Below are positions 20,063-34,680 of a stretch of 64,000 bases of DNA, piece by piece; positions within the stretch are counted from its first letter, which is position 1; every line of letters begins with the position of its first letter. The notes beneath the pieces were generated by a model that saw only the letters and a list, made by a program, of their open reading frames with translations, did not search any database and had not been told where the DNA came from. The DNA is taken from positions 186,001-250,000 of IMG/VR virus record IMGVR_UViG_3300049215_000771; one strand, 5' to 3'. A program made the translations under genes and the position numbers.

Positions 20063-20068
20063 TTACCC

Positions 20069-20719
20069 ATGCTCCGATTCCTCCATAAAGGACCAAAAAA
20101 TCTGCCCATCACCATCGTTGAATGCGCCCCCACTAACCGTACACTCAACATTCTCGGCACTCACCACTTCCTCCCCTTCCCCTACCAGGTGTTCGCTGTC
20201 GCCTTCCACCCTGGCGAACGAACCGAACAACGGGGCGGCTCATTGTTCCATGCCTTCGGCTCCCTTAAACCCATAATCTCACCACACGACGAAGTTTTTA
20301 TCTTCCCCTTCCCGAATTCCTACAATAATGGCTCCGTGTGTATGGGTGAGAACTACATTCACTATAACGGCGACATTCGACAATACATTGACATTTATTT
20401 CAATTCGCCCTTCTCGTCGGCGGTAAGTGCAGCCTATTGGCATGGCGGCAATAACCCCAGCAAAGGAGCTAATTCCTACTGGCGCACAGGCACCGACCCC
20501 TTCAAACTGCCCTGGCATACCCCAAAACTCAAACTAATTAACGCCTTCCCAGGCCATAGCTTCCCCGACATCTTCGACCCGACCTTCACCGAACATACAA
20601 TCCGACAACTCGCTGAACAAATCCGATCCCACGCCAATGGCTACAGCGACGAACAAGTGTGGATCGCCGCCGAAAACCATCTGCTCAAACAATGCTACAA
20701 ACGTGGTACTTCCGGGTGA
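20069..20719 (+). CDS. prokaryotic E2 family D-like protein
   Basis: LPFPY.VF ... PFPN....G.VCMG ... YFNSPFS. Confidence 0.55.
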   Translation: MLRFLHKGPKNLPITIVECAPTNRTLNILGTHHFLPFPYQVFAVAFHPGERTEQRGGSLFHAFGSLKPIISPHDEVFIFPFPNSYNNGSVCMGENYIHYNGDIRQYIDIYFNSPFSSAVSAAYWHGGNNPSKGANSYWRTGTDPFKLPWHTPKLKLINAFPGHSFPDIFDPTFTEHTIRQLAEQIRSHANGYSDEQVWIAAENHLLKQCYKRGTSG

Positions 20720-21327
20720 ACCTTCCCAGGCTGAATCAAATAGCGATGGTATTCGTGCAAAATGATCTTGTTCGCCGCCCGACCCCAGGCTGATCCCGTT
20801 CGCCTCTCCGAACCAACAACATGCAACACCGCATGAATGCAGTTGCACACGTCCGATGACCCCGACAACGCCTGATAATCTACACTTCCACTCTCCAAAC
20901 GTGCCTTCTCAGCTACAGCACGTTGCCATAACTCCTCCTGAACCTCATACGGCCCCAACTCCTCGATAATCCGACCATCAGCACGAGCCTTGTCCAACGT
21001 CGAAGCTAAATCCCAATTCTTCCCAGCCTGACGTTTCAACAAACCAAGATCAGTCCGAGCCGGATACCACGAAATCGTCACCCGCTGTATGTCCGCACCA
21101 GCCCAACGTACAAATGTCGCAAAATTGTGCGAGTTCGCCGCCCGGTTCGGCATAGACTCATAACAATACAACGATGCGTAAAACTTCGGAGGAGGCGGCG
21201 GTGGAGGAGGCGGTACTACGATTTCTTTCTTCTCAACCAACCTGCCCGACACTGGCCCCGAAATAGGTTCAGATTGACTACAACCTACTACCAATACCAA
21301 CAAAAACAACGAAAATGCCTTGAACAT
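20695..21327 (-). CDS. hypothetical lipoprotein
   Basis: signal peptide with VVGC lipobox; only credible - strand gene in the left block. Confidence 0.65.
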   Translation of the reverse strand: MFKAFSLFLLVLVVGCSQSEPISGPVSGRLVEKKEIVVPPPPPPPPPKFYASLYCYESMPNRAANSHNFATFVRWAGADIQRVTISWYPARTDLGLLKRQAGKNWDLASTLDKARADGRIIEELGPYEVQEELWQRAVAEKARLESGSVDYQALSGSSDVCNCIHAVLHVVGSERRTGSAWGRAANKIILHEYHRYLIQPGKVHPEVPRL

Positions 21328-21381
21328 ACCCACTCCTTTACAATCAAACCATCTCGTGGTACTATCCCACAAAGGAAAAAC

Positions 21382-21834
21382 ATGGGCCTCAAACAAAATA
21401 GATCGACAATGCCATCATCATCTAACCTGCCCCGACGTGCCTGGTATCCGTCCGGCCCCTGGATCAACGGTGTTCGCCCACCCGAAGTAGCTACGCCTGA
21501 ACCCAAAATTCCACCAGGCAACCCCGACCCCGATAACTACAAGATCGTTCAAGCCGAGGAAATCGGCCAATACCTCATCATCAAGCTGAACTACCCGAAT
21601 TGTACCAACTTCGAGGGTAACAAAATCCTCGTGTTCAAAGACATCACCCTCCTCAAACTCATCAACCAGAAGAAAATCGACCCCCACTTCTTCAAACACA
21701 AAAACTTCGCCTCCCCCATCGCACGCTTCACCCCTACCCCCGAAGGCTGGGAAATGGCCAAAACCTTCGTCCATGCCATGCTCAACCTCGCTCGCATCAA
21801 GTTCGAGCAGGCCGTCCAAGGCAAGAAATCTTGA
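21382..21834 (+). CDS. conserved phage hypothetical protein
   Basis: AAGGA SD; YPNC.NFEG.KI, DPHF, SP.ARF.P...GW. Confidence 0.65.
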   Translation: MGLKQNRSTMPSSSNLPRRAWYPSGPWINGVRPPEVATPEPKIPPGNPDPDNYKIVQAEEIGQYLIIKLNYPNCTNFEGNKILVFKDITLLKLINQKKIDPHFFKHKNFASPIARFTPTPEGWEMAKTFVHAMLNLARIKFEQAVQGKKS

Positions 21835-21840
21835 AAACTT

Positions 21841-21873
21841 CCCGAACCTTGTAAGGATCACCCAGGTCTTCCC
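21841..21873 (+). promoter_or_regulatory. motif B (ECF-type promoter) outlying copy
   Basis: CCGAACCT-N16-GTCTTCC as in the 27-44 kb copies. Confidence 0.7.
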
Positions 21874-21906
21874 TTCGGAGACACGAAACCCGTAGGGACC
21901 AAGACC

Positions 21907-22926
21907 ATGCTGACCAATCTGACCGTCATCGAAACCGACCGCCGCCCCAACACCACCAGCGTCAAGCCCCTGGACTGGTACGACTACATTCTTGTATCTT
22001 TCAGCGGCGGCAAGGATTCCGTCGCCCTCGTCCTGAAACTTCTCAAAGATGGCGTCCCGACCAGCAAGATCGTCCTGATGCACCAGCACATCGACGGCGA
22101 GCCGGGCGTCGATGCCCCCTTCATGGACTGGCCTTGCACCCAGGGCTACTGCCGGGCCTTCGCCAAAGCCCTCAACCTCAAGCTGCTGTTCCAGTGGCGA
22201 CACGGCGGCTTCGAGAAGGAAATGACCAAGAACAACGCCCGTACCGCCCCCGTCAGCTTCGAGTACCTGAACGGCGGACGAGGCACCGCTGGCGGCGTCA
22301 AAGGCAAGATCAGCACCCGCCGCATGTTCCCCCAGGTCACGGCAGACCTCAGCAAGCGCTGGTGTTCCTCCACCCTGAAGATCGACGTTGCTGCCATCGC
22401 CATCAACAACGACCCGGCCTTCAAGGGCAAGAAAATCCTGTTCCTGACCGGCGAACGCCGCCAGGAATCCGCCGCTCGCTCCAAGTACGCCGAAATGGAA
22501 CAACACCGCACCCACTCCAACAAGCGCCACGTTGACCACTGGCGCATGGTCATCGACTGGACCGAGGAACAGGTCTGGAACATCATGCAGGAATTCAACG
22601 TCATCCCCCACCCCGCCTACCGCCTGGGCTGGGGCCGGGTGTCCTGCATGGCCTGCATCTTCGGCCTCGCCGATCAGTGGGCCTCCGTCCGCAAAATCGC
22701 CCCGGAACTGTTCGCCAAGATCGGCCACTACGAAGCCGACTTCGGCAAAACCATCCACCAGGGCAAAACCGTCACCCAACTGGCCGACAAAGGCACGCCG
22801 TTCGCCGAAACCAACAACCAGGCGCTCGTCGCTGAAGCCATGAGCGAAGATTACCCCTACGAAGTCATCACAACCAACTGGACCCTCCCCTCCGGTGCCT
22901 ACAAGCACGGCGGCGGGCCTTCCTAA
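21907..22926 (+). CDS. PAPS reductase family protein (PP-loop, possible DNA modification)
   Basis: SFSGGKDS; G.RRQES..RS; HPAY.LG..RVSC..CIF. Confidence 0.85.
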   Translation: MLTNLTVIETDRRPNTTSVKPLDWYDYILVSFSGGKDSVALVLKLLKDGVPTSKIVLMHQHIDGEPGVDAPFMDWPCTQGYCRAFAKALNLKLLFQWRHGGFEKEMTKNNARTAPVSFEYLNGGRGTAGGVKGKISTRRMFPQVTADLSKRWCSSTLKIDVAAIAINNDPAFKGKKILFLTGERRQESAARSKYAEMEQHRTHSNKRHVDHWRMVIDWTEEQVWNIMQEFNVIPHPAYRLGWGRVSCMACIFGLADQWASVRKIAPELFAKIGHYEADFGKTIHQGKTVTQLADKGTPFAETNNQALVAEAMSEDYPYEVITTNWTLPSGAYKHGGGPS

Positions 22927-22941
22927 CCCTGAAAGGAACCC

Positions 22942-23052
22942 ATGTTCCGCAAACTCGTTCTCGCCTTCGCCCAGGCCATCGCCAGCCTGTTCCCGCCCCT
23001 CGTCGGCCAACGGCCCTACACCGGCCCGGATACGACCTACCAGCGATTGTAA
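22942..23052 (+). CDS. small peptide (36 aa)
   Basis: AAGGA SD, GC-rich codon usage like the preceding gene. Confidence 0.45.
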   Translation: MFRKLVLAFAQAIASLFPPLVGQRPYTGPDTTYQRL

Positions 23053-23099
23053 CACCAAAACGCACGGTAACACCAACCATGTTACCGTGCGTTGTTTGC

Positions 23100-23128
23100 T
23101 TTACAAACCCCCTTCTGCGTGGTATCAT
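23100..23128 (+). promoter_or_regulatory. sigma70-type promoter, near-leaderless
   Basis: TTTACA-N17-TATCAT with TGn; ATG 7 nt downstream. Confidence 0.7.
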
Positions 23129-23135
23129 CCCAAAC

Positions 23136-23675
23136 ATGAAACCACTCCATGCCGATCACTGGTTGTACAAACGCACCATCCGACTGTTCGGACGTGAACG
23201 CCTCGAACAGTGGAAAGACCAAATCGCTAAGTATTGGGAAAAACAACTCGAAAAAATTGACGAGGATCAACTCCTCCGTGCCCTCACCCGCCTCTACGGT
23301 CGCCGGGAAGGAAAAAAGTTGCTCCGACTCTCACGCTCCGAACAAACCCGCCGCATCGTCGCCCAGGAAGAAGCCTACCTCATCGGTCGCTTCGCCCATA
23401 AACTCGCCTCCATCGCCCAGGACCAGTCCGATAGGTTCTCCACCAACGGCCTCACCCTGGAGGAACACGACTACTCCACCGCTACCGTCATCCACGAAGG
23501 CCAACGCTACACAGTGGACGTTGAAGGACTCATCGTCATCACCGGCACCGTCACAGCTTCCCATGCCGATGGTTCCGAATCCGTCGTCAATGTGTTCTCC
23601 CGCTGGATCACCCACCCCTTCTGGCAGTACGCCCATCTCACCGCCCACTGCCCACCACCCAAATCCAAAACCTAA
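23136..23675 (+). CDS. hypothetical protein
   Basis: after promoter. Confidence 0.65.
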   Translation: MKPLHADHWLYKRTIRLFGRERLEQWKDQIAKYWEKQLEKIDEDQLLRALTRLYGRREGKKLLRLSRSEQTRRIVAQEEAYLIGRFAHKLASIAQDQSDRFSTNGLTLEEHDYSTATVIHEGQRYTVDVEGLIVITGTVTASHADGSESVVNVFSRWITHPFWQYAHLTAHCPPPKSKT

Positions 23676-23725
23676 TCCCCCAAGGCCAGGCCCAAATCCT
23701 GGCCCACTCCTGCGTACATATCAAC

Positions 23726-24040
23726 ATGAGCAGCTACTACCCACTCGATTCACAGAAGAAAGCCTCCTACCTCACTCCACCCGTCCAGGTTATCTACAAA
23801 TCCCCTCAACCTACCAAAAACTCCCCCAACCTCGCCCCTACCTACTCCCAACAGCCTAACAGCCCTATGATCTTCTTCCAAGGCTGCGACCCCCAATCAC
23901 GCACCGGAGCCTGGCTGCCCTTCAATACCAGTAGGTTCTTCAACCCCACACTCCAAGGCAACTGTGACCCACTCCCACCAAAATTCACTCCCTACAACAC
24001 CGTCGCCCCTATCTCCCCGCCACGCATCAATAGCTTGTAG
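23726..24040 (+). CDS. hypothetical Pro-rich protein
   Basis: GTACATA-N5-ATG. Confidence 0.5.
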   Translation: MSSYYPLDSQKKASYLTPPVQVIYKSPQPTKNSPNLAPTYSQQPNSPMIFFQGCDPQSRTGAWLPFNTSRFFNPTLQGNCDPLPPKFTPYNTVAPISPPRINSL

Positions 24041-24070
24041 AAAATTAACTCGAAGTAAATATCTACCTGC

Positions 24071-24658
24071 ATGATCCAACTGCGGTTCAAATTGTGGCTC
24101 GAATTGTTCGATAGAAGCAGTGGCAAACCCCTCACCGGCACCTGGAAACCACCCCTCCAAAGCCCTCCTATCAACAGACAATACAAATATGTCTTCAACC
24201 TCGACTCCGATCCCACCAAAGACTGCCGGGGCCAACCTTGTTTTTGGGTCAACTTCTACGAAAATTACGACGGAGTATACACCGTCACCTTCGGTCATGC
24301 CGAAACCAAATTCCAGGACCGCTCCACAATCAATAAACAAATCCATCAACAAACAGGCACCGACCCAGGTATCGAAATGATGGGAACTGTCATGAGGGTC
24401 ATGGAGGAATTCGTCAACCAAAAACAACCTGTCGGCTTCTCCTGGACAGGCGTTAAGAAATCTACCCCAGGCGCTATCAACACCGACGCCAGAGCTAAAG
24501 TCTATGACCTGTGGGCCAGAAAAACCCTCGCAGGGAAATACACCAAATACCAAGGCATCTGGCTGCGCAATGATGTCTACGAGAAAGAAAGAACTAAACC
24601 CCCTACCCCACCCGACCACCTGACCCCTCTCGAATGGCCCGATGATGAAGAAATATAG
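24071..24658 (+). CDS. putative virion protein
   Basis: TAAATA upstream; N-terminus MIQLRFKLWLE. Confidence 0.6.
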   Translation: MIQLRFKLWLELFDRSSGKPLTGTWKPPLQSPPINRQYKYVFNLDSDPTKDCRGQPCFWVNFYENYDGVYTVTFGHAETKFQDRSTINKQIHQQTGTDPGIEMMGTVMRVMEEFVNQKQPVGFSWTGVKKSTPGAINTDARAKVYDLWARKTLAGKYTKYQGIWLRNDVYEKERTKPPTPPDHLTPLEWPDDEEI

Positions 24659-24662
24659 CCCC

Positions 24663-24726
24663 AGGAGCTATATCTTCAAGGAGCTATATCTTCAAGGAGC
24701 TATATCTTCAAGGAGCTATATCTTCA
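24663..24726. repeat. 4 x 16-bp tandem repeat AGGAGCTATATCTTCA
   Basis: exact tandem copies. Confidence 0.95.
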
Positions 24727-24787
24727 ACCCCTCTAACACTACATTCACTCCCATATCGCTACAACCAAGGTAATAAACCAACCCCTT

Positions 24788-24845
24788 CTTGTGAAGCCCA
24801 CCCCAATCATCTTGTGAAGCCCCTCACTATCTCCTTGTGAAGCCC
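24788..24845. repeat. 3 x CTTGTGAAGCCC at 23-bp period (iteron-like)
   Basis: copies at 24788, 24811, 24834. Confidence 0.85.
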
Positions 24846-24942
24846 GTCCCAAAAACCACACCATTCATAACTTCGCCTCCACCACTTTGTTGTTGTTTTT
24901 CCAACAAACTAGCGATATAGTAAAACCATCAAGCAATCCACC

Positions 24943-25515
24943 ATGCCCAAAGGAAACTCAACCATGATCCCCTTCCTTGCTGAACGCTTTCGCATCTGGA
25001 AATGGGCCATCTTGCTCGCCAGCACCATCACCCTCCTGCCTGGCATCGTCGCCCCACTGTTCGCCCAAAATGGCCGAGGCAGCGAAGCCGCCCTTCGCAC
25101 CGGCTGCCCACTGCTTTGCTGCAATGACGTTCAAACACCCGACATCGGACCCGGCGGCGCTCTCACCCTCCTGGGCGTCATCGCCTTTGCCATCATTCTT
25201 CTGGCCACAGTCCAACACTTCGACGAGAAACGCATCAAGAAAGAACAACAACAAAGGGAACACGAAGAACAAGCAAAACAACAAGCCATCGCCAAGAAAC
25301 AGGCCGAAGATGCCCTCAAATACCCCCAACTCAAAGGCAAGAAAGTCCGCCTCCCTGACTTCAATAACCAACCCACCCAGGGCATCGTTGTTTCCCAATA
25401 CGAAGATCAACTCACCATCCACTTCCTGTCCGATGACGGCCAACTCGAAATGACCAAGAAGAAAATCGAAGAAGTCCAAGTCATTAACCCGGAGACAAAC
25501 ACCAATGAGAAATAA
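24943..25515 (+). CDS. hypothetical membrane protein
   Basis: two TM-like segments, coiled coil, SH3-like tail. Confidence 0.6.
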   Translation: MPKGNSTMIPFLAERFRIWKWAILLASTITLLPGIVAPLFAQNGRGSEAALRTGCPLLCCNDVQTPDIGPGGALTLLGVIAFAIILLATVQHFDEKRIKKEQQQREHEEQAKQQAIAKKQAEDALKYPQLKGKKVRLPDFNNQPTQGIVVSQYEDQLTIHFLSDDGQLEMTKKKIEEVQVINPETNTNEK

Positions 25516-25864
25516 CAACCTGCCAGCATTGCAAGAACATATCAACAATCTGCTCAAACAATACCATCTCACCGCCCGCTGGGAGAAAAAACCCCGCCCA
25601 GGCCATTACTCCAACTTCGACTACAAAGCCCATACCCTCAAACGCCGTGCCTACCTGCCACGCATTACCAGCGAAATCGCCTACTGGACCAGCCTCCATG
25701 AAATCGGCCACCTGGTCGCTGATAACGAACCTACCAGGGAACTCGGCGAAATCTCAGCCTGGCTGTGGGCTACCCAAAATTCCATCATCCAAGTCAGCAA
25801 ACAAGCCCGTAACTACATCCGTGATTGCCTCAACTCCTATAACGTCCACGTCGATGGCCTCTAA
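25505..25864 (+). CDS. HExxH (zincin-like) motif protein
   Basis: SLHEIGH. Confidence 0.55.
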   Translation: MRNNNLPALQEHINNLLKQYHLTARWEKKPRPGHYSNFDYKAHTLKRRAYLPRITSEIAYWTSLHEIGHLVADNEPTRELGEISAWLWATQNSIIQVSKQARNYIRDCLNSYNVHVDGL

Positions 25865-25928
25865 ATCACCACCAAAACACAATGCCAACATCCAACAACA
25901 AACAGAAACAAATTCACTACATAACCTC

Positions 25929-26279
25929 ATGCCCCTGCAATCGTTCACCACCTGGCTCACTGAAAACCAAAAACAACGTATCCAGTTCGCCGGCTGGTTC
26001 AAAGATGGTACTGTTATCGTCTACCTCAATGGCATCCGTCATGTCTATATCACCGACGCCATCTACCACGAACGCTGGAAAGCACTCAGTAAGCGTAATC
26101 CCATGCTCGTAATGTCCCAAATCGCTCAACTCGTCCGTGCCGGCCACGCCCAACAAACTGAACCACCATCCGTGTCCAGAAAACCTATCCAACCCCCTAA
26201 CCCAAAACCTGTCATCAAACAGCCTAGCTTGTTCGATAACGAGGACGATCAGGAAAACGACCACCAACACACCTTGTAG
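25929..26279 (+). CDS. putative virion protein
   Basis: CTACATA-N5-ATG; MPLQSFTTWLTE. Confidence 0.6.
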   Translation: MPLQSFTTWLTENQKQRIQFAGWFKDGTVIVYLNGIRHVYITDAIYHERWKALSKRNPMLVMSQIAQLVRAGHAQQTEPPSVSRKPIQPPNPKPVIKQPSLFDNEDDQENDHQHTL

Positions 26280-26403
26280 CTTCTGCGCTCGTCCTGCGCA
26301 ATCCTGGCATCATTACAAGGCCATCCCATCTGTCCCCCTTCCTTACACCCAACAGTAACCAGATGGGTATTAACACTCCAGCATCCATCATAGAAAGGAA
26401 TTT

Positions 26404-26721
26404 ATGCAACAACCTCCCATAGCCCTTTGGCAAGAATTCAATAACAACACCTTGCCGCCAACACTACGCTTCACACTCCCCATCGACTTCTGTGAAGCCT
26501 GCCATCGACCTACCTTCTTCGGCCACTGGCTCCCCCAACACTCCATCTCCCAGGAAATCCAACTCGCTCAACTCGATTGCCCCCTCGATGACCCTCCCCT
26601 CTCCCGTGTCCGCTGCAAATCATGCTTCCTCGACCTCGTGGAACCAAATCACCAACAAAGTCGTGCGCCTCGCAAGTCCAAACGGCGCAAACAGTTAAAC
26701 AAGCATTCCGAACCCAGGTAA
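26404..26721 (+). CDS. hypothetical zinc-finger protein
   Basis: CxxC...CxxC. Confidence 0.55.
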   Translation: MQQPPIALWQEFNNNTLPPTLRFTLPIDFCEACHRPTFFGHWLPQHSISQEIQLAQLDCPLDDPPLSRVRCKSCFLDLVEPNHQQSRAPRKSKRRKQLNKHSEPR

Positions 26722-26871
26722 AAATTGAATTGACGTAAGGGTGTAGCCAGCCTTCATTTACGTCGAGGCCACCCCAGGCTAGAAAATTCTGAAAGTATTT
26801 GGAGGAAATGGTGAAAAAATTGCGAGCCTGGGGCGTAGGGAGGGGCTTGTAGGAGGAGTTTGGAGAGATTT

Positions 26872-26939
26872 CCAGCCGCCCCCGCCCGCCTCAGCTAGTC
26901 GTGTGGTGGCTCAGTGCTGAGGCGGGCGGGGGCGGCTGG
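26872..26939. repeat. perfect 24-bp GC-rich inverted repeat, 20-nt loop
   Basis: CCAGCCGCCCCCGCCCGCCTCAGC / GCTGAGGCGGGCGGGGGCGGCTGG. Confidence 0.95.
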
Positions 26940-27573
26940 CGATATGGAGGAGTGGGTTGAGCGAATTGAACATAAGCGCCATTATCGGACGTTGAGAAAT
27001 GCGCAACAAAAAGCCGAGAGGCTGCCCCAACGGGTGTCGCCCAATCACCCGTTAGCTGCAAACCTCTCGGCGTGCTTGAATGATACTACGATTTACCGAG
27101 GTTGTAAAGCACACGACCAGGAAATCTGAAAGAAATCCTGGTCGTGGCCGTGCGTCGAGAACCCATCCCGGTCCCCGATCCCTCCAGCCTATCCCACCAC
27201 CTGCCCCCTGTCCAGCAAAATCATCAACAATTTGACACTGTGCGTTTGTGCAGTATCAAAAATGAGGCGTCAGGTACAAAGGTTTGAAGTGGTGGTTTTA
27301 GAGATTTGTACCCTCCGGTCATTTTCTGCGCACGGATGTACACCAGGTTATTTGGGATAATGCCAGGGGGAGATTGAGGGGTGTTGCGCCGGGCTGGGGT
27401 TGGCTGGCAAAGGCTGTTTTTAGCATTTGTACAGTATTGTTTTAGGCATTTGTACCGTAGGGGTTGGCTGCGCCGGGCGTGGCTGGGGTGGGGTTGCGCC
27501 GAATTGCGTTGGGAGATTCCGAACCTTACGAGTTTGGGGCGGTCTTCCTGGCAACCCATAGGGAGGAATTTCG

Positions 27574-28665
27574 ATGTCGGTTCAACATTTCAAGGTGTTC
27601 TTCGGGCCGGACGATCCGTGGGGAGCGGTAGCGCCCACGGCGGACGAGCGCCGGGAGTTGGTGGAGAGTGGGTTTGCCGGTTTCATCGGCAACGAGCGGG
27701 CGATCAAGAAGCTGAAGGCGTCGGCGTTCGATGCCCTGGGCAAGCCCGACCATCTTTGCCGTGACCTGGCGTTCAGCATTTTCGGCCCGGCGTCGAGTGG
27801 CAAGACGACGCTGGCCCGGCTGTACGCCAAAACCGTCGATCTGCCCTTCGTGGAGGTTTCCCCGAAGGCGGTGAAGACGATGGACGACCTGTTCCGGGAG
27901 ATCGACCGGGTGTTGACGGTCGAGGGCGTGCCGGTGGTGGAAGTGGTCCGGCGCAACTACCATGTTCTGCCGCCCTGTGTGATCTTCATTGACGAGGTTC
28001 ACGCACTGGCGAAGGCAGTCGAGCAGGGCTTGCTGAAGGCGACGGAGTACAACGACGCCACGCTGGTCACGGAGTCCGGCAAAACGATCAACTGCCACAA
28101 TGTTTGCTGGATCATTGCCACGACGGACGAGGGGCGGCTGTTCGACGCATTCCGCACCCGGTTTTCGCCGGTCAACCTTCGCTATCTGAGCAAGGCGGAC
28201 ATTGCCAAGATCGTTCGCCTGGCTCACCCGGACTTCGACGAGGCGACGGCGGCGCTGGTTGCTCACTACAACAGCCGCATTCCCCGCAAGGCGTTGGAGT
28301 TCGCCCGTTACATGAAGTTGGTTCGGCAGATGGGCGCTGACCGCACCTGGGCGGACGTGGCGCAGGAAGTTGCCACGGATGAAGGGATCGACCAGTACGG
28401 CATGAGCGAGGTTCACCTTCGCATTCTGAAGGCGCTGGGCCAGGGTCCGGTGGCGGCAAACCGGATCGTGAATGTCGCAGGAGCGAAGAAGGAGGAAGTC
28501 GAGCGGTTCATCATGCCGTGGTTGCTGACGGTCACGGAAGACACGCCGGCGCTGGTCACGGTGACGAGCAGGGGATACACCATCACCGAGGCGGGCCTGG
28601 CCGAGTTGGACAAGCGAGGGATCGCCCATCGAGGGACGTTCGCCACGCCGAACTATCGCCCGTAG
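27574..28665 (+). CDS. ruvB: RuvB-like AAA+ branch-migration ATPase
   Basis: FIG.E; Walker A GPASSGKTT; Walker B FIDEVH; ATT.....DAFRTRF; C-terminal winged helix G.D..G......L....GP......RG..T. Confidence 0.8.
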   Translation: MSVQHFKVFFGPDDPWGAVAPTADERRELVESGFAGFIGNERAIKKLKASAFDALGKPDHLCRDLAFSIFGPASSGKTTLARLYAKTVDLPFVEVSPKAVKTMDDLFREIDRVLTVEGVPVVEVVRRNYHVLPPCVIFIDEVHALAKAVEQGLLKATEYNDATLVTESGKTINCHNVCWIIATTDEGRLFDAFRTRFSPVNLRYLSKADIAKIVRLAHPDFDEATAALVAHYNSRIPRKALEFARYMKLVRQMGADRTWADVAQEVATDEGIDQYGMSEVHLRILKALGQGPVAANRIVNVAGAKKEEVERFIMPWLLTVTEDTPALVTVTSRGYTITEAGLAELDKRGIAHRGTFATPNYRP

Positions 28666-28776
28666 TTCGGCGGCTGGCCGGGGGCTGCCCACTCCTGGCC
28701 TGGGCGCAATAGCCTACTGGTACAAACCTTCAAGTTGATGTTTTAGAGATTTGTACCCTACGGGCTGGAGGGAAGC

Positions 28777-28932
28777 ATGAAATACATCGTGTGGGTACGG
28801 GAGAAGGGGCGTTGGGAGCCGAACGGCGACGGGCCTTTGACGCAGAAGCAGGCCGAGCGGATTGCCAAGGAAATCCGTCAGGAGTGCAACGTGCCGACGA
28901 AGGTGTTGCCGGTGGGACAAGAACCGAAATAG
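28777..28932 (+). CDS. small hypothetical protein
   Basis: GGAGG SD after motif A. Confidence 0.6.
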   Translation: MKYIVWVREKGRWEPNGDGPLTQKQAERIAKEIRQECNVPTKVLPVGQEPK

Positions 28933-28940
28933 GAGGGGAT

Positions 28941-29141
28941 ATGGACCCTGTTGCTTGCATCGAGGAAGCCGAGGCGCAGATCGAATCCAACAACCCGGAC
29001 GATGCTGCCTGGGCGCTTCAGGACTATCGGGAGTGGCGGCGCAAGGGTGGATTCACCGACGCCGGCCTGGACGAGCGTGCCCGGATTGTCAACAAGGAAA
29101 TCAAGCAGACCGGGCATCCTGGGGTGAACCTGGGATTTTGA
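28941..29141 (+). CDS. small hypothetical protein
   Basis: AGGAGG SD. Confidence 0.65.
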   Translation: MDPVACIEEAEAQIESNNPDDAAWALQDYREWRRKGGFTDAGLDERARIVNKEIKQTGHPGVNLGF

Positions 29142-29197
29142 TGAAAGTTTCCGAACCTTGCTGGCCCGGCAAGGTCTTCCATGCGGGAGGGGACGAC

Positions 29198-29332
29198 ATG
29201 AAGAAAACGAATCGTGTGCGTAAACATCGTAGGGACAAGAACAACGGCAAGAACGGTTGGGTGGGTGGAAATCCCCGCTACGACCGTCGCAAGGCGACCG
29301 AGGGAAAGAATCGGTCGATGGGCCGCAATTAG
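29198..29332 (+). CDS. small basic protein
   Basis: after motif B. Confidence 0.55.
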   Translation: MKKTNRVRKHRRDKNNGKNGWVGGNPRYDRRKATEGKNRSMGRN

Positions 29333-29344
29333 GGAGGGGCTGCA

Positions 29345-29590
29345 ATGCCTGTTTCGTTGAATCGTGTTCTGACCGTGGCGAAGGGCAACGGGGGCTTCCT
29401 GGACCGCCTGGGCATTGAGACGATTGCCAGGGAGGACCGGCTTCGCCTGTTGCTGGTTCGGTGTGGCAATGGTCGTTTCCTGGCCCCGGCGCAGGACGTG
29501 AACCATTTCATCGCCATCATCGAGCGAGACAACCAGGACTACATTCGGGACGTGTCGCTGCCGACTTCCGACCCGATCTGGAAAACCTGA
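29345..29590 (+). CDS. hypothetical protein
   Basis: GGAGG SD; stop abuts motif B. Confidence 0.65.
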   Translation: MPVSLNRVLTVAKGNGGFLDRLGIETIAREDRLRLLLVRCGNGRFLAPAQDVNHFIAIIERDNQDYIRDVSLPTSDPIWKT

Positions 29591-29657
29591 AAGTTTCCGA
29601 ACCTTGCTGGCCCGGCAAGGTCTTCCATGCGAGTCGAGACAACCTGGATAGGGAGAA

Positions 29658-30179
29658 ATGAACATGGTCACTTTCAGCAAGGGCGACAACATCATCGACA
29701 GCCGGGACGTGATTTCCCGCATCGAGGAGTTGGAGTCCGAGCGTGAAGCCTTGTCCGATGCCGTGGACAGCGCTCGTGAGGCGTTGGAGGAACACCAAAG
29801 CAACGAGCCGGACGAGGACGCCGACGAAGAAGTACACGAAGCGTACCAGGAGAAGCTGTCGGAGTTGAAGGAAGCGCTGGTCGAGGCGGCTTCCGACCTG
29901 GACGATTGGGACGAGGACGACGACCAGGGCGGCGAGTTGAAGGAGCTTCGGGCCTTCAGCGAGGAGGGCGAGAGCGCCACGTCGGACTGGCCGCACGGCG
30001 CAATGTGCATCCTGGAAAGCTACTTCGAGGACTACTGCCAGGAGTTGCTGGCCGACATCGGCGACTTGCCGAAGGACTTGCCGCATTACATCGTGATCGA
30101 CTGGACGGCCACGGCGAAGAACCTGGAGGCCGACTATTCGAGCATCACCTGGGGCGGCGAGACGTATCTGGTCCGCTGA
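29658..30179 (+). CDS. acidic ArdA-like antirestriction (DNA mimic) protein
   Basis: very acidic; C-terminus FEDY..ELL.D.G.LP..L..YI.ID....A..L..DY resembles ArdA. Confidence 0.6.
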   Translation: MNMVTFSKGDNIIDSRDVISRIEELESEREALSDAVDSAREALEEHQSNEPDEDADEEVHEAYQEKLSELKEALVEAASDLDDWDEDDDQGGELKELRAFSEEGESATSDWPHGAMCILESYFEDYCQELLADIGDLPKDLPHYIVIDWTATAKNLEADYSSITWGGETYLVR

Positions 30180-30252
30180 TCCCGAACCTTAGACCATTCG
30201 CCCCGGTCTAAGGTATGCGTCGAGTATCCATTACCCTGGTAGGGAGAGAGTC

Positions 30253-30429
30253 ATGCAAGCAACGGTCGAGGGCAACGAGTTGGTGGTTCGCATTCCGCTT
30301 CAGAAGCCGGCTCCGAGTTCGACGGGCCGCACCCTGATCGTGGCGAACAGTGGCGGGCCGAAGGCGACCGAGGCCGAGGTCAACGGCAAGAAGATCACGG
30401 TCAACCTGAGCGCCTGGATCAAGCCCTAA
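30253..30429 (+). CDS. small beta-rich hypothetical protein
   Basis: GGGAG SD; followed by terminator. Confidence 0.65.
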   Translation: MQATVEGNELVVRIPLQKPAPSSTGRTLIVANSGGPKATEAEVNGKKITVNLSAWIKP

Positions 30430-30555
30430 CGTGTGGGCAACCGGCCTGGGGGATGCAGCCGCCCCCAGGCCGTTTCTTTGCGATAGGGAGCAGGTACAAA
30501 CCTTCAAGTTGTAGCTTTATAGGTTTGTACCCTACCGGCCAGGAGGTAACGGACC

Positions 30556-30714
30556 ATGAAAACTGTCACGATGCCGAAGAAGCCGGACATGACGATTCGC
30601 CTGGAGCCGATCAAGATGCGGCTTCCCTTCGTGGGTCGGGGGCGCAAGACCCGGCACGAGCCTCGCAGGAGTCGGCGGGGCGACAAGCAACGGATGGCGA
30701 AGGAAAGTTTCTGA
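30556..30714 (+). CDS. small basic protein
   Basis: AGGAGG SD after motif A; stop abuts motif B. Confidence 0.6.
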   Translation: MKTVTMPKKPDMTIRLEPIKMRLPFVGRGRKTRHEPRRSRRGDKQRMAKESF

Positions 30715-30789
30715 AAAGTTTCCGAACCTTGCTGGCCCGGCGAGGTCTTCCATGCGAGAGACGAGACAACCCCCAACGGGAGATATGGA

Positions 30790-32400
30790 ATGGCTGCTTT
30801 CCTGAAGATTCAGAATCCTGGCGTTGCTGATCCCCTGGCCTTCACCCTCCTGGGTGCTTCCACGAGCCGGTCCAGCGACAACAGCGCCACCATCGGCAAG
30901 TTCGGGTCGGGCAACAAGCACGGTGTCGCCGTGTGTCTCCGTGAGGAGTTGCCGCCCGTTGTGTTCGCCGGCACGCTCCGCATGACGTTCGGCACGACCG
31001 ACGTGAAGATGGACGCCGGCACGCACAGCAAGACGTTCGCTCGTGTGCAGGTGAAGTACGGCGGCAAGGACAAGGCCGGCGTCAACCGTTCGTCCACGGA
31101 AGACCTGGGCTATGTCCTGGAGTACGGGGCTTCCGACTGGCTGGGCATCGACCTGGCGCTTCGGGAGTTCGTGTCCAACGCCATCGACCGGGCGATTGTG
31201 GAAGGCGAGATCGCTTTCATCGCCAAGTTCGCTTTCGAGTACAACGAGCGCAACCCCGGCTTCCACGCCCTCCTGGACCAGAAGGACGCCGAGGCGGTTT
31301 CCATCTGCCACAAGGCGCTGGAAACCTACCGGCTGACGGCGCAGGACTTCAAGAACGTCCGGGTCGAGGTCGTGGAGGAGAACCAGGTCCGGGCGAAGGA
31401 CGGCTACACCACGGTTTTCGTGCCGCTGAATGCCGACGTTCTGGCGTTCTACCAGTCGCTTGGCAAGTGGTTCCTGCACTTCTCGGAGCCGGAACTGCTG
31501 AACAAGACGATTCTGCCGAAGAAGAATCGCAACCTGGGCAACCGGGTCGCAGCGGTGATCTACCGTCGTGGTGTTCGTGTTCGGGAGTTCGAGAGCAGCG
31601 ACGTTCCTTCGCTGTTCGATTACAACCTGCCGAACATCGAACTGGATGAGGCACGCAAGGCCGACGACTGGCGGATTCGGACGGCGGCGGGCAAGGCCGT
31701 CCGTGATGCCGACCAGGACACGCTTCGGGTGCTGTTCCAGTCGTTCCGCAGCAGCCAGCGCTATTGGGAACACGACTTCGACACCTACGGCCTGGAAGTG
31801 TCGTCGTGGGAGACGGACAAGCCGGAAGCGGCTGCCGCCCGTCAGACCAACTGGCAGAAGGCGTTCGAGCAGGTTTTCGACGCCAACGCTGTGATCGCCA
31901 CGGCGACGGGCGGCGAGTTTGCCGAGCGGAAGGGTTACAACGTCATCACGGCCCCGGAGCCGTTCGTCAAGGCGGCTGGCAAGCATGGCGTTCGCACCCC
32001 GGAGAAGGTGTTGACGCAGGACGACCGGGAAGGGCGAGAGATCATCGACGCCACGCCGGACGCTCTTGCCGCCCTGGACTTCGTGTGGGACGTGGTTCAG
32101 CGCTCTGGCATGACCAACGGCAAGGAGCGCCCGGCCTGCAAGGTGTTCCGCAAGATCATGTCGGGAGGGTCGCAGACGTTGGGGTTCTACCGTGACGCCA
32201 CGGTGTACATCAACGAGGACATCGCCGGCTATGGTTCGCTGACGGGCGGCTGGCAGGTGTTGACGCAGCAGCTTCTCGTGACGGCGCTGGAGGAAGTGGC
32301 CCATCACGTTACGGGGGCGACCGACAACAGCCGGGACTTCCAGGACTACGTTCTGAACCTGGCGATCAAGCTGGCGAAGGTCCAGGCCGGCTTGATCTGA
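30790..32400 (+). CDS. GHKL-type ATPase with permuted motif order and degenerate zincin-like tail
   Basis: LLGAS...IGKFGSG.K precedes DW...LREFVSNAID; C-terminal EEVAHH. Confidence 0.7.
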   Translation: MAAFLKIQNPGVADPLAFTLLGASTSRSSDNSATIGKFGSGNKHGVAVCLREELPPVVFAGTLRMTFGTTDVKMDAGTHSKTFARVQVKYGGKDKAGVNRSSTEDLGYVLEYGASDWLGIDLALREFVSNAIDRAIVEGEIAFIAKFAFEYNERNPGFHALLDQKDAEAVSICHKALETYRLTAQDFKNVRVEVVEENQVRAKDGYTTVFVPLNADVLAFYQSLGKWFLHFSEPELLNKTILPKKNRNLGNRVAAVIYRRGVRVREFESSDVPSLFDYNLPNIELDEARKADDWRIRTAAGKAVRDADQDTLRVLFQSFRSSQRYWEHDFDTYGLEVSSWETDKPEAAAARQTNWQKAFEQVFDANAVIATATGGEFAERKGYNVITAPEPFVKAAGKHGVRTPEKVLTQDDREGREIIDATPDALAALDFVWDVVQRSGMTNGKERPACKVFRKIMSGGSQTLGFYRDATVYINEDIAGYGSLTGGWQVLTQQLLVTALEEVAHHVTGATDNSRDFQDYVLNLAIKLAKVQAGLI

Positions 32401-32529
32401 TCTTTCTCCCTGGGTTGGCCCGGTGGGGGAGCAATCCCCTGCCGGGCTTTTTTGTCAGCACAGGCCAGGTACAATCCTACAAGTGGATGTTTTAGAGATT
32501 TGTACCCTACCAGTCGGGAGGAAAAAACC

Positions 32530-32622
32530 ATGATTGCAGTCAAGTTGTTCATTGGGTTCTACGGCATGGCCATCGTGTCGGCCATCATCGCCTGGTTGAC
32601 CAATGGTGAACGAAAACAGTAA
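32530..32622 (+). CDS. small membrane peptide (30 aa)
   Basis: GGAGG SD, single TM, between motif A and motif B. Confidence 0.55.
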   Translation: MIAVKLFIGFYGMAIVSAIIAWLTNGERKQ

Positions 32623-32824
32623 AAGTTTCCGAACCTTGCTGGCCCGGCGAGGTCTTCTATGCGAAGGACACAACGCCGAACGAAAAGGGGGTTAGATGCA
32701 GCTTCTCACTTGTTTAGCTGAGGCTTGTAAGGAACCATGAGCCTCGAACAAGGTTCCCCCTACGCCGCCTGCGACGGCGTAGGATTGGCCTGCGATTTCA
32801 ACAACCCATACGGAGGAAAGTTTC

Positions 32825-33379
32825 ATGGTGATGCACGGTTCCGATCACGCCCTTCGCAGTCAGTTCAAGGTGGGCGACAAGGTTTATTTCGGTCGCAAAC
32901 GGGGCGAGAAAACGCTCGGCGAGATCGTCCGCTTCGGCCCGAAGAACGCCAAGGTCAAGCAGTTGGAGGATCGGGGTTCGATTCGGGATTATCCCATCGG
33001 CACGACCTGGACGGTCCCGCTCAAGCTGCTGACGCTGGCCACGGTGCAGTTTCCCGCCGACAAGCTGCCCAGCAGCGCTCCGCCCCCGCCCGTGAAGCGG
33101 GAGCCGTTGAAGTACAACCCGTTCGCCGGCATCGACAACCTGCTCCTGGAAGCCCTGGCGTCGGCCTACAGCGGCCTCAGCCCGGAGAACCTGACCTGTG
33201 ACGGCGAGGCCAGCGCCGCCCATGTCCAGGCCACCCGGACGCACCTGAATCGTGTCATTCGTGGCTGCAAGCTGGCCCTGAACCGTGATGATCTCGACGA
33301 AGGCGAGGTCTTCACCTGGCTGATGACCAAGCGGGACTATGAGCGCCAGCGGGCCGAGCGAAAATCGGCCACGGCCTAA
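32825..33379 (+). CDS. hypothetical protein (SH3/KOW-like N-terminus)
   Basis: FKVGDKV.F..G......K..KV. Confidence 0.65.
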   Translation: MVMHGSDHALRSQFKVGDKVYFGRKRGEKTLGEIVRFGPKNAKVKQLEDRGSIRDYPIGTTWTVPLKLLTLATVQFPADKLPSSAPPPPVKREPLKYNPFAGIDNLLLEALASAYSGLSPENLTCDGEASAAHVQATRTHLNRVIRGCKLALNRDDLDEGEVFTWLMTKRDYERQRAERKSATA

Positions 33380-33448
33380 GAAATTTCCGAACCTCCGCTC
33401 GCCCCGGAGGTCTTCCTTGCGGGCAACGACAACCATAGGGAGAAGGAC

Positions 33449-33895
33449 ATGAAGCATATCGACGACCTGATGAAGTCGCAACAGGGCGAGCGCAACCCAG
33501 GGCAGCACATCGGCAAGTTCCTGTTGGAACATTCCAACTCGCCGGAATACCTGGTGAGCCAACTGTCGGCCTACCTGGAAGCGGCCCAGGCCGACCTGGA
33601 AGCCGAGCGAGCGATGTTTCGGCGTCTCACGAAGCGGCCCGACCCGCCGAAGCCCACCAAGTTCGCCGTCGTGCAGGTGAAGGGCGGGGCGTCCAACGCC
33701 CTGGGGACGAGCGGGCCGGTCCAGGTCTGCCAGTACAAGCAGGACGCACAAGACCTGGCGGTGAAGATCGCCCTTGAGGGGTTGACCGAGCCTGGTGATC
33801 CGGGCGAGGCCGAGGTTCGCAAGGAAATCTTGGAAACGGGAGGCTACATCGACAACAGCGGCGAGTGGGCCGTGTGCATCGAGAGCATCGAGTAA
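33449..33895 (+). CDS. hypothetical protein
   Basis: after motif B. Confidence 0.7.
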   Translation: MKHIDDLMKSQQGERNPGQHIGKFLLEHSNSPEYLVSQLSAYLEAAQADLEAERAMFRRLTKRPDPPKPTKFAVVQVKGGASNALGTSGPVQVCQYKQDAQDLAVKIALEGLTEPGDPGEAEVRKEILETGGYIDNSGEWAVCIESIE

Positions 33896-34645: not shown

Positions 34646-34680
34646 CCATGCTATTCTTCCTGTTGGTGGGCCTGTTCACG

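What the first reader, a model, noticed from the sequence alone, without database searches (positions are those of the whole stretch)
26723..27520. Sharp strand-skew switch with a 24-bp perfect palindrome: origin or genome junction
The + strand is strongly C/A-rich approaching 26.7 kb and abruptly G-rich after ~26.8 kb, although genes on both sides are on +. Two GC-rich + strand genes differ at third codon positions (PAPS: GTC/GCC/ACC; RuvB-like: GTG/GCG/ACG), so the skew is not transcriptional. At the switch lie a TGACGTAA..TTACGTC inverted pair, a perfect 24-bp GC hairpin with G-runs (26872-26939) and G-rich tracts (27380-27500). This fits a bidirectional replication origin or the joined ends of a linear genome whose first-entering end holds the early module.
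Basis: partly seen in the sequence, partly recalled or inferred. Interest (0 to 1): 0.6.

Follow-up and report, generated by a model that had tools for sequence, protein, structure and literature searches.

The report
Origin-like strand-bias flip in huge phage
An 852-base gene-free stretch in a huge (over 530 kb) T4-like phage from moss is where a strong, strand-specific mutation bias abruptly changes sign. Two related phages show the same layout, so it is probably a fixed start point of DNA replication, or less likely a joined genome end, sitting at the head of a GC-rich, promoter-packed gene module.

Summary
The G/C skew change at window 26,650-26,715 (stop codon of the last left-hand gene, 26721) is the sharpest in the whole 532,729-bp phage record. 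The 24-bp hairpin is the longest perfect inverted repeat in it.

The bias follows the DNA strand, not gene direction. It grows toward the site over about 20 kb at four-fold degenerate codon positions (G/C skew there, 'GC4 skew': -0.35 to -0.77). It then jumps to +0.20 and decays again.

Two relatives (LR756511.1 and an IMG/VR contig) have the same layout: a 0.9-1.1 kb non-coding junction, their sharpest or largest upward skew jump, and a roughly 20-kb GC-rich module packed with a GTAC-core promoter-like repeat. In LR756511.1, genes of both orientations show the strand-specific flip. A rare inverted repeat, GACGTA..TACGTC, lies in both that junction and ours.

The junction also holds three copies of that repeat, an ECF-sigma-like promoter and two G-quadruplex motifs upstream of a RuvB-like gene.

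Best reading: a fixed replication start. Joined genome ends, or a purely compositional or transcriptional boundary, are not excluded.

The raw-skew global extremes lie elsewhere but follow gene orientation. A 3-4-fold depth step at the hairpin in one sample is unexplained. No raw reads were available.

The parts
12000..26721 (+). Left block of about 30 small + strand genes whose + strand becomes steadily more C/A-rich toward the junction. GC4 skew (G/C skew at four-fold degenerate codon positions): -0.44 at 12-16 kb, -0.62, -0.68, then -0.77 at 24-26.7 kb. Includes a CAP-domain lipoprotein (16307-16807) and a PAPS-reductase-like gene (21907-22926).
20695..21327 (-). The only minus-strand gene in the left block (lipoprotein-like signal peptide). 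On its own coding strand GC3 skew is +0.63 and AT3 skew -0.35, the mirror image of its + strand neighbours (-0.65, -0.52). This shows the bias belongs to the DNA strand.
26404..26721 (+). Last gene of the left block (105 aa, two CxxC pairs, no Pfam family). The skew change point coincides with its stop codon.
26722..27573 (.). 852-nt non-coding junction ('J'). It is highly structured if single-stranded (RNA fold z -4.5) and has no Rfam family at gathering score.
26732..26764 (.). Inverted repeat GACGTA-N21-TACGTC. The pattern (N10-30) occurs twice per genome here and in LR756511.1, and one copy lies in each junction. Candidate site for a dimeric DNA-binding protein.
26872..26939 (.). Perfect 24-bp GC-rich (88% GC arms) inverted repeat with a 20-nt loop, and no T/U run on either side. 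Longest perfect inverted repeat in the genome. In run X3 the contigs break inside it (26895 | 26924) and depth steps from 3.6 to 14.2.
26944..27146 (+). Possible 61-aa ORF (26944-27129; not called by the metagenome gene caller, unsupported). A 16-bp near-perfect hairpin (27112-27146) overlaps its stop codon.
27269..27320 (+). First full copy of the module-specific 'class A' element: terminal GGTACAA / TTGTACC arms around a conserved core ending TTTGTACCCT. No gene starts directly downstream.
27354..27493 (+). G-rich leader. Two G-quadruplex motifs (27354-27393, 27460-27493) flank two tandem half copies of class A (27416-27433 weak, 27438-27467). Direct repeats GGGGTTGGCTG x2 and TTGCGCCG x3.
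27517..27547 (+). 'Class B' promoter-like site of ECF-sigma type (TTCCGAACC-N15-GGTCTTC). It lies 27 nt before the RuvB-like ATG, with an RBS (GGGAGGAA) between.
27574..28665 (+). RuvB-like AAA+ ATPase (363 aa). Aligns over residues 37-339 to solved RuvB structures. First gene of the GC-rich module.
27574..47662 (+). GC-rich module (GC 0.608 against 0.527 for the genome; GC3 about 0.81) of about 40 small, mostly orphan + strand genes. It holds 12 full plus about 8 half class A copies (all +, found nowhere else in the genome) and 20 of the genome's 34 class B sites. Intrinsic terminators at 46668-46696, 47176-47206 and 47628-47662. GC4 skew decays from +0.20 to -0.27 along it.

Best explanation
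The non-coding stretch 26722-27573 is a conserved junction of this family of huge T4-like phages. Replication forks, or another process that leaves one strand single-stranded, diverge from it. The most likely reading is a fixed bidirectional replication start.

Shown:
- The + strand is A/C-rich on the left and G/T-rich on the right. The strand left G/T-rich on each side carries the classic single-strand deamination signature (C to T, A to G).
- The bias follows the DNA strand whatever the gene direction.
- It is strongest next to the junction and fades over 15-35 kb on both sides.
- The same pattern sits at the homologous position in relatives.

Inferred:
- Forks leaving this site always move outward, so nearby DNA has a fixed leading/lagging polarity. 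Farther away, other starts (a second junction near G000 513 kb, and recombination-dependent starts as in T4) randomise fork direction, so the bias averages out.
- The GACGTA..TACGTC inverted repeat, the 24-bp hairpin and the G-rich non-template tract downstream of a class A promoter with no gene directly downstream are candidate origin parts: a protein-binding site, a structure-forming element and an R-loop or primer-forming leader.

The same stretch is also the control region of the adjacent GC-rich module. Three class A copies and one ECF-type class B promoter precede the RuvB-like gene, and the module carries about 40 such sites for about 40 small genes.
For: - Sharpest skew change in the genome, located at a gene end.
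- Third-position and four-fold-site bias, with all three codon positions shifted the same way: GC skew at positions 1/2/3 is +0.10/-0.17/-0.42 in the left block against about +0.23/-0.04/-0.07 elsewhere.
- The lone minus-strand gene has the mirror-image bias.
- Monotonic position gradients: Spearman rho -0.71 (p 1e-9, 55 genes) on the left and -0.69 (p 1e-6, 39 genes) on the right. GC4 skew jumps from -0.77 to +0.20.
- The orientation-corrected strand component is near zero over most of the genome. It has upward jumps only here (-0.52 to +0.17/+0.35) and near 510-513 kb.
- LR756511.1 (major capsid protein 81% identical, broad synteny). Its largest upward skew jump and a GC step from 0.41 to 0.50 lie at the record start. 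Left of the junction, + genes have GC4 skew -0.46/-0.44 and minus genes +0.22 on their own strand. Right of it, + genes have +0.32/+0.28 and minus genes -0.57/-0.51/-0.28 on their own strand. So the flip is strand-specific across genes of both orientations.
- The junction lies between the same syntenic backbone blocks in both genomes.
- The rare GACGTA..TACGTC inverted repeat is in both junctions.
- The third relative, G002: its sharpest jump (295.4 kb) is a roughly 1.1-kb non-coding stretch at the head of a GC-rich, repeat-dense module, and that stretch shares motifs with the LR756511.1 junction.
- The authors of LR756511.1 state that genome starts were moved to intergenic regions that were in some cases suspected origins.
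- The junction is physically continuous in an independent contig.
Against: - The raw cumulative skew extremes are at G000 189,773 and 512,998, not here.
- The amplitude here (strand component about -0.5 to -0.64) is larger than at the other jump (about 0.2-0.35). Fork direction alone should give equal maxima, so an extra or different process is needed, for example long-lived single strands.
- No E. coli-type DnaA box is present. There is no clear AT-rich unwinding element and no recognisable initiator gene. The RuvB-like gene is 150 kb from the junction in the relative.
- The only depth signal is a one-sided 3-4-fold step at the hairpin in run X3, not a symmetric peak.
- Within this genome, strand-specificity rests on one minus-strand gene.
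- Gene calls outside the window come from a crude home-made caller, and the orientation correction assumes a constant coding-strand component.
- It is not known that LR756511.1 was one of the 'some cases' where the start was set at a suspected origin.
Confidence: 0.45

Rival explanations
1. Joined physical ends. Virion DNA is linear with fixed ends at the junction, perhaps with the GC-rich module as a long direct terminal repeat, as in T5 or SPO1 where the repeat carries the first-expressed genes. The assembly closed the ends. End-initiated strand displacement would give the same skew sign.
For: - Same sign and end-graded bias as for an origin.
- The module looks like a host-takeover region: about 40 small orphan genes, each with its own promoter-like site, plus terminators. 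In the relative it holds DUF932 and RNA ligase genes.
- In run X3, depth steps from 3.6 to 14.2 exactly at the hairpin. No alternative flank appears among the pieces and loose ends listed, though 75 pieces and 64 loose ends were not shown.
- In that sample the module assembled as one 23.9-kb contig, while neighbouring regions gave 2.3-6.5 kb contigs.
- In X1, if module depth (89.4) holds up to the hairpin, the 64.7 mean of the spanning contig implies about 44 on the left, a ratio near 2. This is my arithmetic and depends on that assumption.
- The LR756511.1 record begins exactly at the module.
Against: - The ratio in X3 is about 3.4, not 2, and differs between samples.
- Depths are whole-contig means, not profiles.
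- End resection, the usual fate of ends in T4-type recombination-dependent replication, predicts the opposite skew sign. This is inference from established knowledge.
- The relative was reported as circularised.
- No read ends could be examined.
Confidence: 0.2
2. A module boundary with no role in replication. Two gene blocks of different history or expression meet here. The bias comes from acquisition from a strongly skewed donor, or from transcription-associated mutation (divergent or antisense transcription from the junction). The junction is only a terminator or insulator plus promoter cluster.
For: - GC content and codon usage change at the same point.
- Window 0-64 kb is a non-syntenic accessory zone, whose few homologues are scattered in the relative.
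- The PAPS-reductase gene's best phage match is an unrelated Pseudoalteromonas phage.
- The right side is extremely promoter-dense and has a strongly T-rich third position (AT4 skew -0.42 to -0.69), as expected from heavy transcription.
- Transcription architecture switches from tightly packed operons to one promoter per gene.
- Other long hairpins in the genome sit right after stop codons, like terminators.
Against: - A smooth gradient over 55 genes is not expected from patchwork acquisition.
- Coding-strand (sense) transcription predicts G/T-rich coding strands, but the left block's coding strand is C/A-rich.
- No class A or B site points leftward.
- In the relative, genes convergent with the module (20-35 kb) and genes pointing toward the junction (580-590 kb) carry the strand bias. 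Antisense read-through would have to cross many terminators to explain this.
- The same layout is conserved in three genomes whose module genes are not homologous.
- No flanking direct or inverted repeats of an inserted element.
Confidence: 0.25
3. Assembly artefact: a chimeric join of two unrelated sequences.
For: Composition changes abruptly, and in run X3 the contigs break inside the hairpin with different depths on the two sides.
Against: - A 4,050-nt contig from run X1 crosses 24698-28747 with no differences. X1 may be the sample the window came from, so the independence is of assembler only.
- The 23.9-kb contig from a second sample starts 1,187 nt upstream of the RuvB-like gene, 485 nt left of the hairpin.
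- Both sides belong to the same phage lineage, since homologues of both are in LR756511.1.
Confidence: 0.02

Closest known systems
Skew-inferred replication origins of huge phages (Al-Shayeb et al. 2020, PMC7162821)
   Same: A huge phage from a metagenome, with an origin proposed from a G/C skew sign change in an intergenic region. The closest relative found (LR756511.1) starts at the equivalent junction.
   Different: Here the flip is local, fading within 15-35 kb. It is not the raw cumulative-skew extreme. Genes on both sides point the same way. There is a second such jump about 300 kb away. That paper describes whole-genome bidirectional or unidirectional patterns.
T4 origins oriF/oriG (a promoter-made R-loop primes the leading strand; later replication is recombination-dependent). 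From my own knowledge, not tested here.
   Same: A T4-like phage (portal, sheath, gp23-type capsid). A promoter-like element with no gene directly downstream (27269-27320) reads into a structured leader. Random later starts would explain why the bias fades with distance.
   Different: The T4 downstream element is an AT-rich unwinding region, whereas here it is G-rich with G-quadruplex motifs. No transcript or primer has been mapped.
Terminal-redundancy early modules of SPO1 and T5 (from my own knowledge)
   Same: A roughly 20-kb block of many small genes, each with its own strong promoter and terminator, starting at a genome discontinuity. Extra depth is seen over the block in one sample.
   Different: The depth ratio is not 2, and no ends have been shown. 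The promoters appear to need phage sigma factors, so immediate-early timing is doubtful.
'Factory-roof' or N-domain skew profiles of multi-origin chromosomes, and mitochondrial strand asymmetry (from my own knowledge)
   Same: Upward jumps followed by gradual declines. G002 shows three teeth of 16-21 kb. An A/C-rich versus G/T-rich strand pair with four-fold-site G/C skew near -0.8, as in the vertebrate mitochondrial light strand.
   Different: Those are eukaryotic or organelle systems. As far as I know, nothing comparable has been described at this scale in a phage.
ECF (group 4) sigma-factor promoters
   Same: Class B has GAAC, a 17-nt spacer, then GTC, 25-45 nt before start codons. It follows gene orientation genome-wide. 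The phage has two sigma-70-family genes.
   Different: Which sigma reads it, and the transcription start sites, are unknown. The spacer is itself a variable inverted repeat.

Membership tests
Bidirectional replication origin inferred from strand asymmetry | One strand changes from C-rich to G-rich at the site | tested here: met
   change point 26,650-26,715, the largest in the genome.
Bidirectional replication origin inferred from strand asymmetry | The asymmetry follows the DNA strand, not gene direction | tested here: met
   (one minus-strand gene here, GC3 skew +0.63 on its own strand). (about 35 genes of both orientations around the junction of LR756511.1).
Bidirectional replication origin inferred from strand asymmetry | The site is the global minimum of cumulative G/C skew | tested here: not met
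   minimum at G000 512,998; this site is only a local minimum. After correcting for gene orientation it is one of two upward jumps.
Bidirectional replication origin inferred from strand asymmetry | Initiator-binding repeats (DnaA boxes or iterons) and an AT-rich unwinding element | tested here: inconclusive
   No E. coli-type DnaA box within one mismatch. Short direct repeats and a conserved inverted repeat are present. There is only a modest 45-nt AT-rich patch at 26780-26825. The host and the initiator are unknown.
Bidirectional replication origin inferred from strand asymmetry | Depth maximum centred on the site in replicating populations | tested here: inconclusive
   Only contig-mean depths are available. 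X3 shows a one-sided step (3.6 to 14.2) at the hairpin, and X1 has one contig across it.
Long direct terminal repeat / fixed genome ends | Exactly two-fold depth over the repeat, with sharp edges | tested here: inconclusive
   about 3.4-fold in X3. In X1, a ratio near 2 follows only under an assumption.
Long direct terminal repeat / fixed genome ends | Read starts and ends pile up at the edges | not testable with these tools
   All runs found are held as contigs only.
Intrinsic (factor-independent) terminator, for the 24-bp hairpin | GC-rich stem, short loop, then a T/U run | tested here: not met
   The loop is 20 nt and there is no T run on either strand. True terminators with T runs exist at 46668-46696 and 47176-47206.
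Hairpin-telomere (protelomerase) site | Uninterrupted palindrome; flanks form an inverted duplication in assemblies | tested here: not met
   The loop is 20 nt and non-palindromic, and the flanks are unrelated.
ECF-sigma-type promoter (class B site 27517-27547) | A GAAC-type -35 and a GTC-type -10 spaced 16-17 nt apart, upstream of genes, with a cognate sigma gene present | tested here: met
   34 sites follow gene strand. 15 exact matches in the window against 0 expected. Sigma70_r2 genes at G000 413540-413710 and 90692-90868. Transcription starts not mapped.
RuvB branch-migration ATPase (27574-28665) | AAA+ core plus C-terminal winged helix, aligned over full length | tested here: met
   Pfam AAA 1.6e-13, RuvB_N 5.9e-9, RuvB_C 9.6e-5 (below its cut-off). 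PDB RuvB chains match residues 37-339, best E 2.8e-13. No RuvA partner was looked for.

The most novel reading that the evidence does not exclude
Huge T4-like phages of this family carry fixed, closely spaced replication starts. These give a 'factory-roof' skew profile with mitochondria-like strand bias. The start at this junction selectively over-replicates the adjacent GC-rich, promoter-dense accessory module. The 3-4-fold depth step at the hairpin would then reflect programmed local amplification, or sub-genomic copies, of a host-takeover module.
Probability: 0.12. Interest if true: 0.85.

Novelty: new variant of a known kind. Interest (0 to 1): 0.6.

Why it matters
How phages with genomes above 500 kb start and organise replication is unknown, because none of this family is in culture. 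This junction gives a precise, conserved 0.85-1.1 kb candidate with nameable parts to test: an inverted repeat, a hairpin and a G-rich leader.

It also shows that raw cumulative skew can point to the wrong place when gene orientation dominates. Four-fold-site, orientation-corrected skew finds local flips instead.

The neighbouring module is a conserved architecture with fast-changing content. It is GC-rich, about 20 kb long, has about one promoter per gene, and uses a family-wide GTAC-core motif. That is what one expects of a host-takeover or counter-defence region, and it defines two phage promoter classes that can be checked by transcript 5'-end mapping.

Tried and rejected
- My first argument, that the global skew extremes lie elsewhere so this is just a module edge, was dropped. 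Those extremes track gene orientation, and the bias here is strand-specific and graded.
- Codon-usage selection as the sole cause: rejected because of the mirror-image minus-strand gene.
- The C-rich stretch at G000 290-300 kb has a different cause. It reflects second-position bias (-0.63) in a repetitive 2048-aa protein.
- Class A repeats as CRISPR repeats, integron attC sites or RNA hairpins: rejected. They are 350-4000 bp apart and sit 20-55 nt before start codons. Half copies lack the left arm, and arm extensions do not covary consistently.
- The 24-bp hairpin as a terminator or telomere site: rejected (see membership tests). Rfam gives only sub-threshold matches to generic microRNA hairpin models.
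- An inserted mobile element: no flanking direct or inverted repeats. Only 13-nt GC-rich matches to the hairpin arm at 48104 and 49989, at chance level.
- The 552-aa minus-strand ORF 21418-23076, called as a gene in the metagenome annotation, is a shadow of the + strand genes (GC1 0.78; the PAPS-reductase gene lies on +).
- Searches that found nothing: the RuvB-like protein in IMG/VR contigs; class A and class B patterns in IMG/VR; a junction 32-mer in metagenome contigs; Rfam at gathering score over the window; tRNA genes in the window.
- The sigma-70 consensus scan was not enriched.
- No RNA polymerase family was found in the genome. The control search for PF00940 did not ring, so that result is uninformative.
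- There is no skew switch at the RuvB-like gene of the relative.
- G001 (343 kb, 69% complete) shows no such module.
- The GACGTA..TACGTC pattern was absent from four of five partial relatives, and the one hit is of a different kind.
Full report
CONTEXT. The window is G000:C1:186001-250000 of a 532,729-bp IMG/VR record. That record was cut as a 'provirus' from a 673,178-bp scaffold; record coordinate = G000 + 709. The genome is a huge T4-like myovirus. It has a T4-type portal containing an intein, a tail sheath, a P2-I-like baseplate protein and a gp23-type major capsid protein. It also encodes a class I aminoacyl-tRNA synthetase, an SNF2 helicase, a Ro60-like protein and two sigma-70-family proteins. 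It occurs in moss metagenomes.

- + strand G/C skew is -0.19 to -0.375 over 16-27 kb and +0.13 to +0.16 over 27-30 kb.
- The change point is 26,650-26,715, at the stop codon (26721) of the last left-hand gene.
- It is the largest skew change in the whole record at 1.5, 3 and 5 kb scales.
- The 24-bp hairpin is perfect. It is the longest perfect inverted repeat in the genome and is very stable.
- The G-rich tracts contain two of the 21 + strand G-quadruplex motifs in the genome.
- In addition, GC content rises from 0.53 to 0.61 for 27574-47618.

WHAT CAUSES THE SKEW.
- My first reading was that this is only a local minimum, because raw cumulative skew peaks at G000 189,773 and bottoms at 512,998. 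Those extremes coincide with changes of gene orientation, so they are weak evidence about replication.
- By codon position, the left block has G/C skew +0.10/-0.17/-0.42 at positions 1/2/3, against about +0.23/-0.04/-0.07 for other + strand genes. All positions shift toward C, the third most. That is the mark of mutation pressure.
- The only minus-strand gene in the block (20695-21327) has GC3 skew +0.63 on its own strand, while its neighbours have -0.65 and -0.52. So the bias belongs to the DNA strand, not the coding strand.
- At four-fold degenerate sites the skew falls smoothly from -0.35 (0-12 kb) to -0.77 (24-26.7 kb). It jumps to +0.20 (28-32 kb) and falls again to -0.27 (44-48 kb). Spearman rho is -0.71 (p 1e-9) on the left and -0.69 (p 1e-6) on the right.
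- The + strand on the left is A/C-rich, so its partner strand is G/T-rich, as after deamination of a strand that spends time single-stranded. The right side is the mirror image.
- After removing a constant coding-strand component, the strand-specific part is near zero over most of the genome. It has upward jumps only here and near 510-513 kb. The second jump lies in a 650-bp divergent intergenic region.

ANATOMY OF THE JUNCTION (26722-27573). No gene is called here. In order it holds:
- an inverted repeat GACGTA-N21-TACGTC (26732-26764);
- an imperfect inverted repeat (26772-26833);
- the 24-bp hairpin (26872-26939);
- an unsupported 61-aa ORF that ends in a second hairpin (27112-27146);
- a full copy of a roughly 50-nt 'class A' element (27269-27320);
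- a G-rich leader with two half copies of class A (27416-27467);
- a 'class B' site (27517-27547);
- a ribosome-binding site and the RuvB-like start codon.

Class A has 12 full and about 8 half copies. All are on the + strand and all lie within 27269-47243. The core TTGTACCYTA occurs 16 times in the window against 0.05 expected. Copies sit 20-55 nt before start codons and, at the right end of the module, directly after intrinsic terminators.

Class B (TTCCGAACC, then 13-16 nt, then GTCTTC) looks like an ECF-sigma promoter. There are 34 sites genome-wide, all following gene orientation, and 20 are in the module. The motif usually begins right after the previous stop codon.

The left side is tightly packed operons. 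The right side has about one promoter-like site per small orphan gene.

RELATIVES.
- LR756511.1 (595 kb, GC 0.42) shares the capsid protein at 81% identity and broad synteny. Window 0-64 kb lies in a non-syntenic zone between two conserved blocks. In LR756511.1 the same zone contains the record's start.
- At that start, GC steps from 0.41 to 0.50 and skew from about -0.18 to +0.2. This is its largest upward jump.
- Its first 19 kb is a GC-rich + strand module with 47 copies of a motif of the form TATAAAGCTGTAC. These again lie after terminators and before ribosome-binding sites.
- Genes of both orientations show a strand-specific flip there. Left of the junction, + genes have GC4 skew -0.46/-0.44 and minus genes +0.22. 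Right of it, + genes have +0.32/+0.28 and minus genes -0.57/-0.51/-0.28, each measured on its own coding strand.
- The pattern GACGTA-N10-30-TACGTC occurs twice per genome, with one copy in each junction. This was noticed after the fact, but chance placement in both roughly 1-kb junctions is about 1e-5.
- A third relative, G002 (341 kb, GC 0.43), has a GC-rich stretch (274-295 kb) with about 60 copies of a motif ending ATTGTACC. Its sharpest skew jump is at 295.4 kb, in a roughly 1.1-kb non-coding stretch. That stretch shares TCCCTAAGTC and GAACGCTnGCGTTC motifs with the LR756511.1 junction. Further jumps lie at 274.1 and 258.4 kb.
- The module genes are not homologous between genomes at E 1e-6 or better. 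What is conserved is the architecture and the GTAC-core motif.

INTERPRETATION. A process that treats the two strands differently diverges from this junction, acts most strongly nearby, and is conserved in position.
- A fixed bidirectional replication start fits best. The fading with distance would reflect random fork direction elsewhere.
- Sense transcription predicts the wrong sign on the left, and no class A or B site points left.
- In the relative, antisense read-through would have to cross many terminators.
- Fixed genome ends with end-initiated strand displacement give the same sign and cannot be excluded.
- End resection predicts the opposite sign.
- The larger amplitude here than at the second jump suggests long-lived single strands. 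Leftward forks would meet the left block's genes head-on, which might contribute. Both points are inference.

UNEXPLAINED: THE DEPTH STEP.
- In run X3, contigs left of the hairpin have mean depth 2.4-4.5. Those to the right have 9.4-15.1, with a break at 26895 | 26924. In X1 one contig crosses the site.
- In the assembly of the second sample, the module with short flanks is one 23.9-kb contig (about 26,387 to about 50,280). Neighbouring regions are in 2.3, 2.7 and 6.5 kb contigs.
- A step of about 3.4-fold is neither a symmetric origin peak nor the exact two-fold of a terminal repeat. An 8-point GC difference is unlikely to explain it.

LIMITS.
- Gene models outside the window come from a simple self-trained ORF scorer (67-73% of bases called).
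- The orientation correction assumes one coding-strand value.
- Within this genome, strand-specificity rests on one gene.
- Promoter function, timing of the module and any origin activity are all inferred.

Noticed in passing
window 27517-43174; genome-wide in G000: A genome-wide ECF-sigma-like promoter motif (TTCCGAACC, 13-16 nt, GTCTTC). There are 34 sites that follow gene orientation. The motif usually starts right after the previous stop codon, and its spacer is a variable inverted repeat. One site precedes the PAPS-reductase gene (21840).
   Followed up: partly
window 37997-38050: A tRNA-like minihelix (T-arm GGTTCGAGTCC plus an acceptor-like stem) lies between a class A copy (37828-37879) and a class B site (38070). 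It gives a sub-threshold Rfam match to the tRNA-like mascRNA model (24.7 bits, E 0.006). ARAGORN calls no tRNA.
   Followed up: partly
G000 512593-513246 (outside the window): A second origin-like upward jump of the orientation-corrected strand bias, in a 650-bp divergent intergenic region. It has no GC-rich module and no counterpart in LR756511.1, where the syntenic place (about 395 kb) shows no flip.
   Followed up: partly
window 12390-12445 and 63677-63738; G000 344849-344913: Three more unusually long perfect inverted repeats (22, 20 and 22 bp stems, 12-22 nt loops), each starting within a few bases of a stop codon. The one at 12390 lies where the strong C-bias of the left block begins.
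   Followed up: no
window 26895-26924 (runs X3/X4): Contig break inside the hairpin with a 3-4-fold depth step. The module assembled as one 23.9-kb contig in a sample where the rest of the phage is in 2-7 kb pieces.
   Followed up: partly
window 21418-23076 (-) and 23897-24619 (-): The public gene calls in the left block include long minus-strand shadow ORFs (first-position GC about 0.78) laid over real + strand genes such as the PAPS-reductase gene. The unusual composition misleads the gene caller.
   Followed up: yes
window 1-212 (gene starts at G000 185745): A phage-encoded ribosomal protein L7/L12 homologue (Pfam Ribosomal_L12 in the public annotation). A tRNA-synt_1b gene at 59364-60536 (-) and a dihydroorotate dehydrogenase-like gene at 47876-48637 (-) are also present.
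   Followed up: no
G000 293649-299795: A 2048-aa highly repetitive protein (11-mers repeated about 30 times) with second-codon-position G/C skew -0.63. It produces the second-largest skew edges in the genome for a purely protein-composition reason.
   Followed up: partly
whole record: IMG/VR labels the record a provirus and trims 140 kb from a 673-kb scaffold. Gene content and synteny with a 595-kb phage suggest the scaffold may be phage throughout. The trimmed part was not examined.
   Followed up: no
G002 (IMGVR_UViG_3300014202_001521) 258-296 kb: A saw-tooth skew with three upward jumps 16-21 kb apart (295.4, 274.1 and 258.4 kb) in a relative. This resembles a multi-origin 'factory-roof' profile.
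   Followed up: partly
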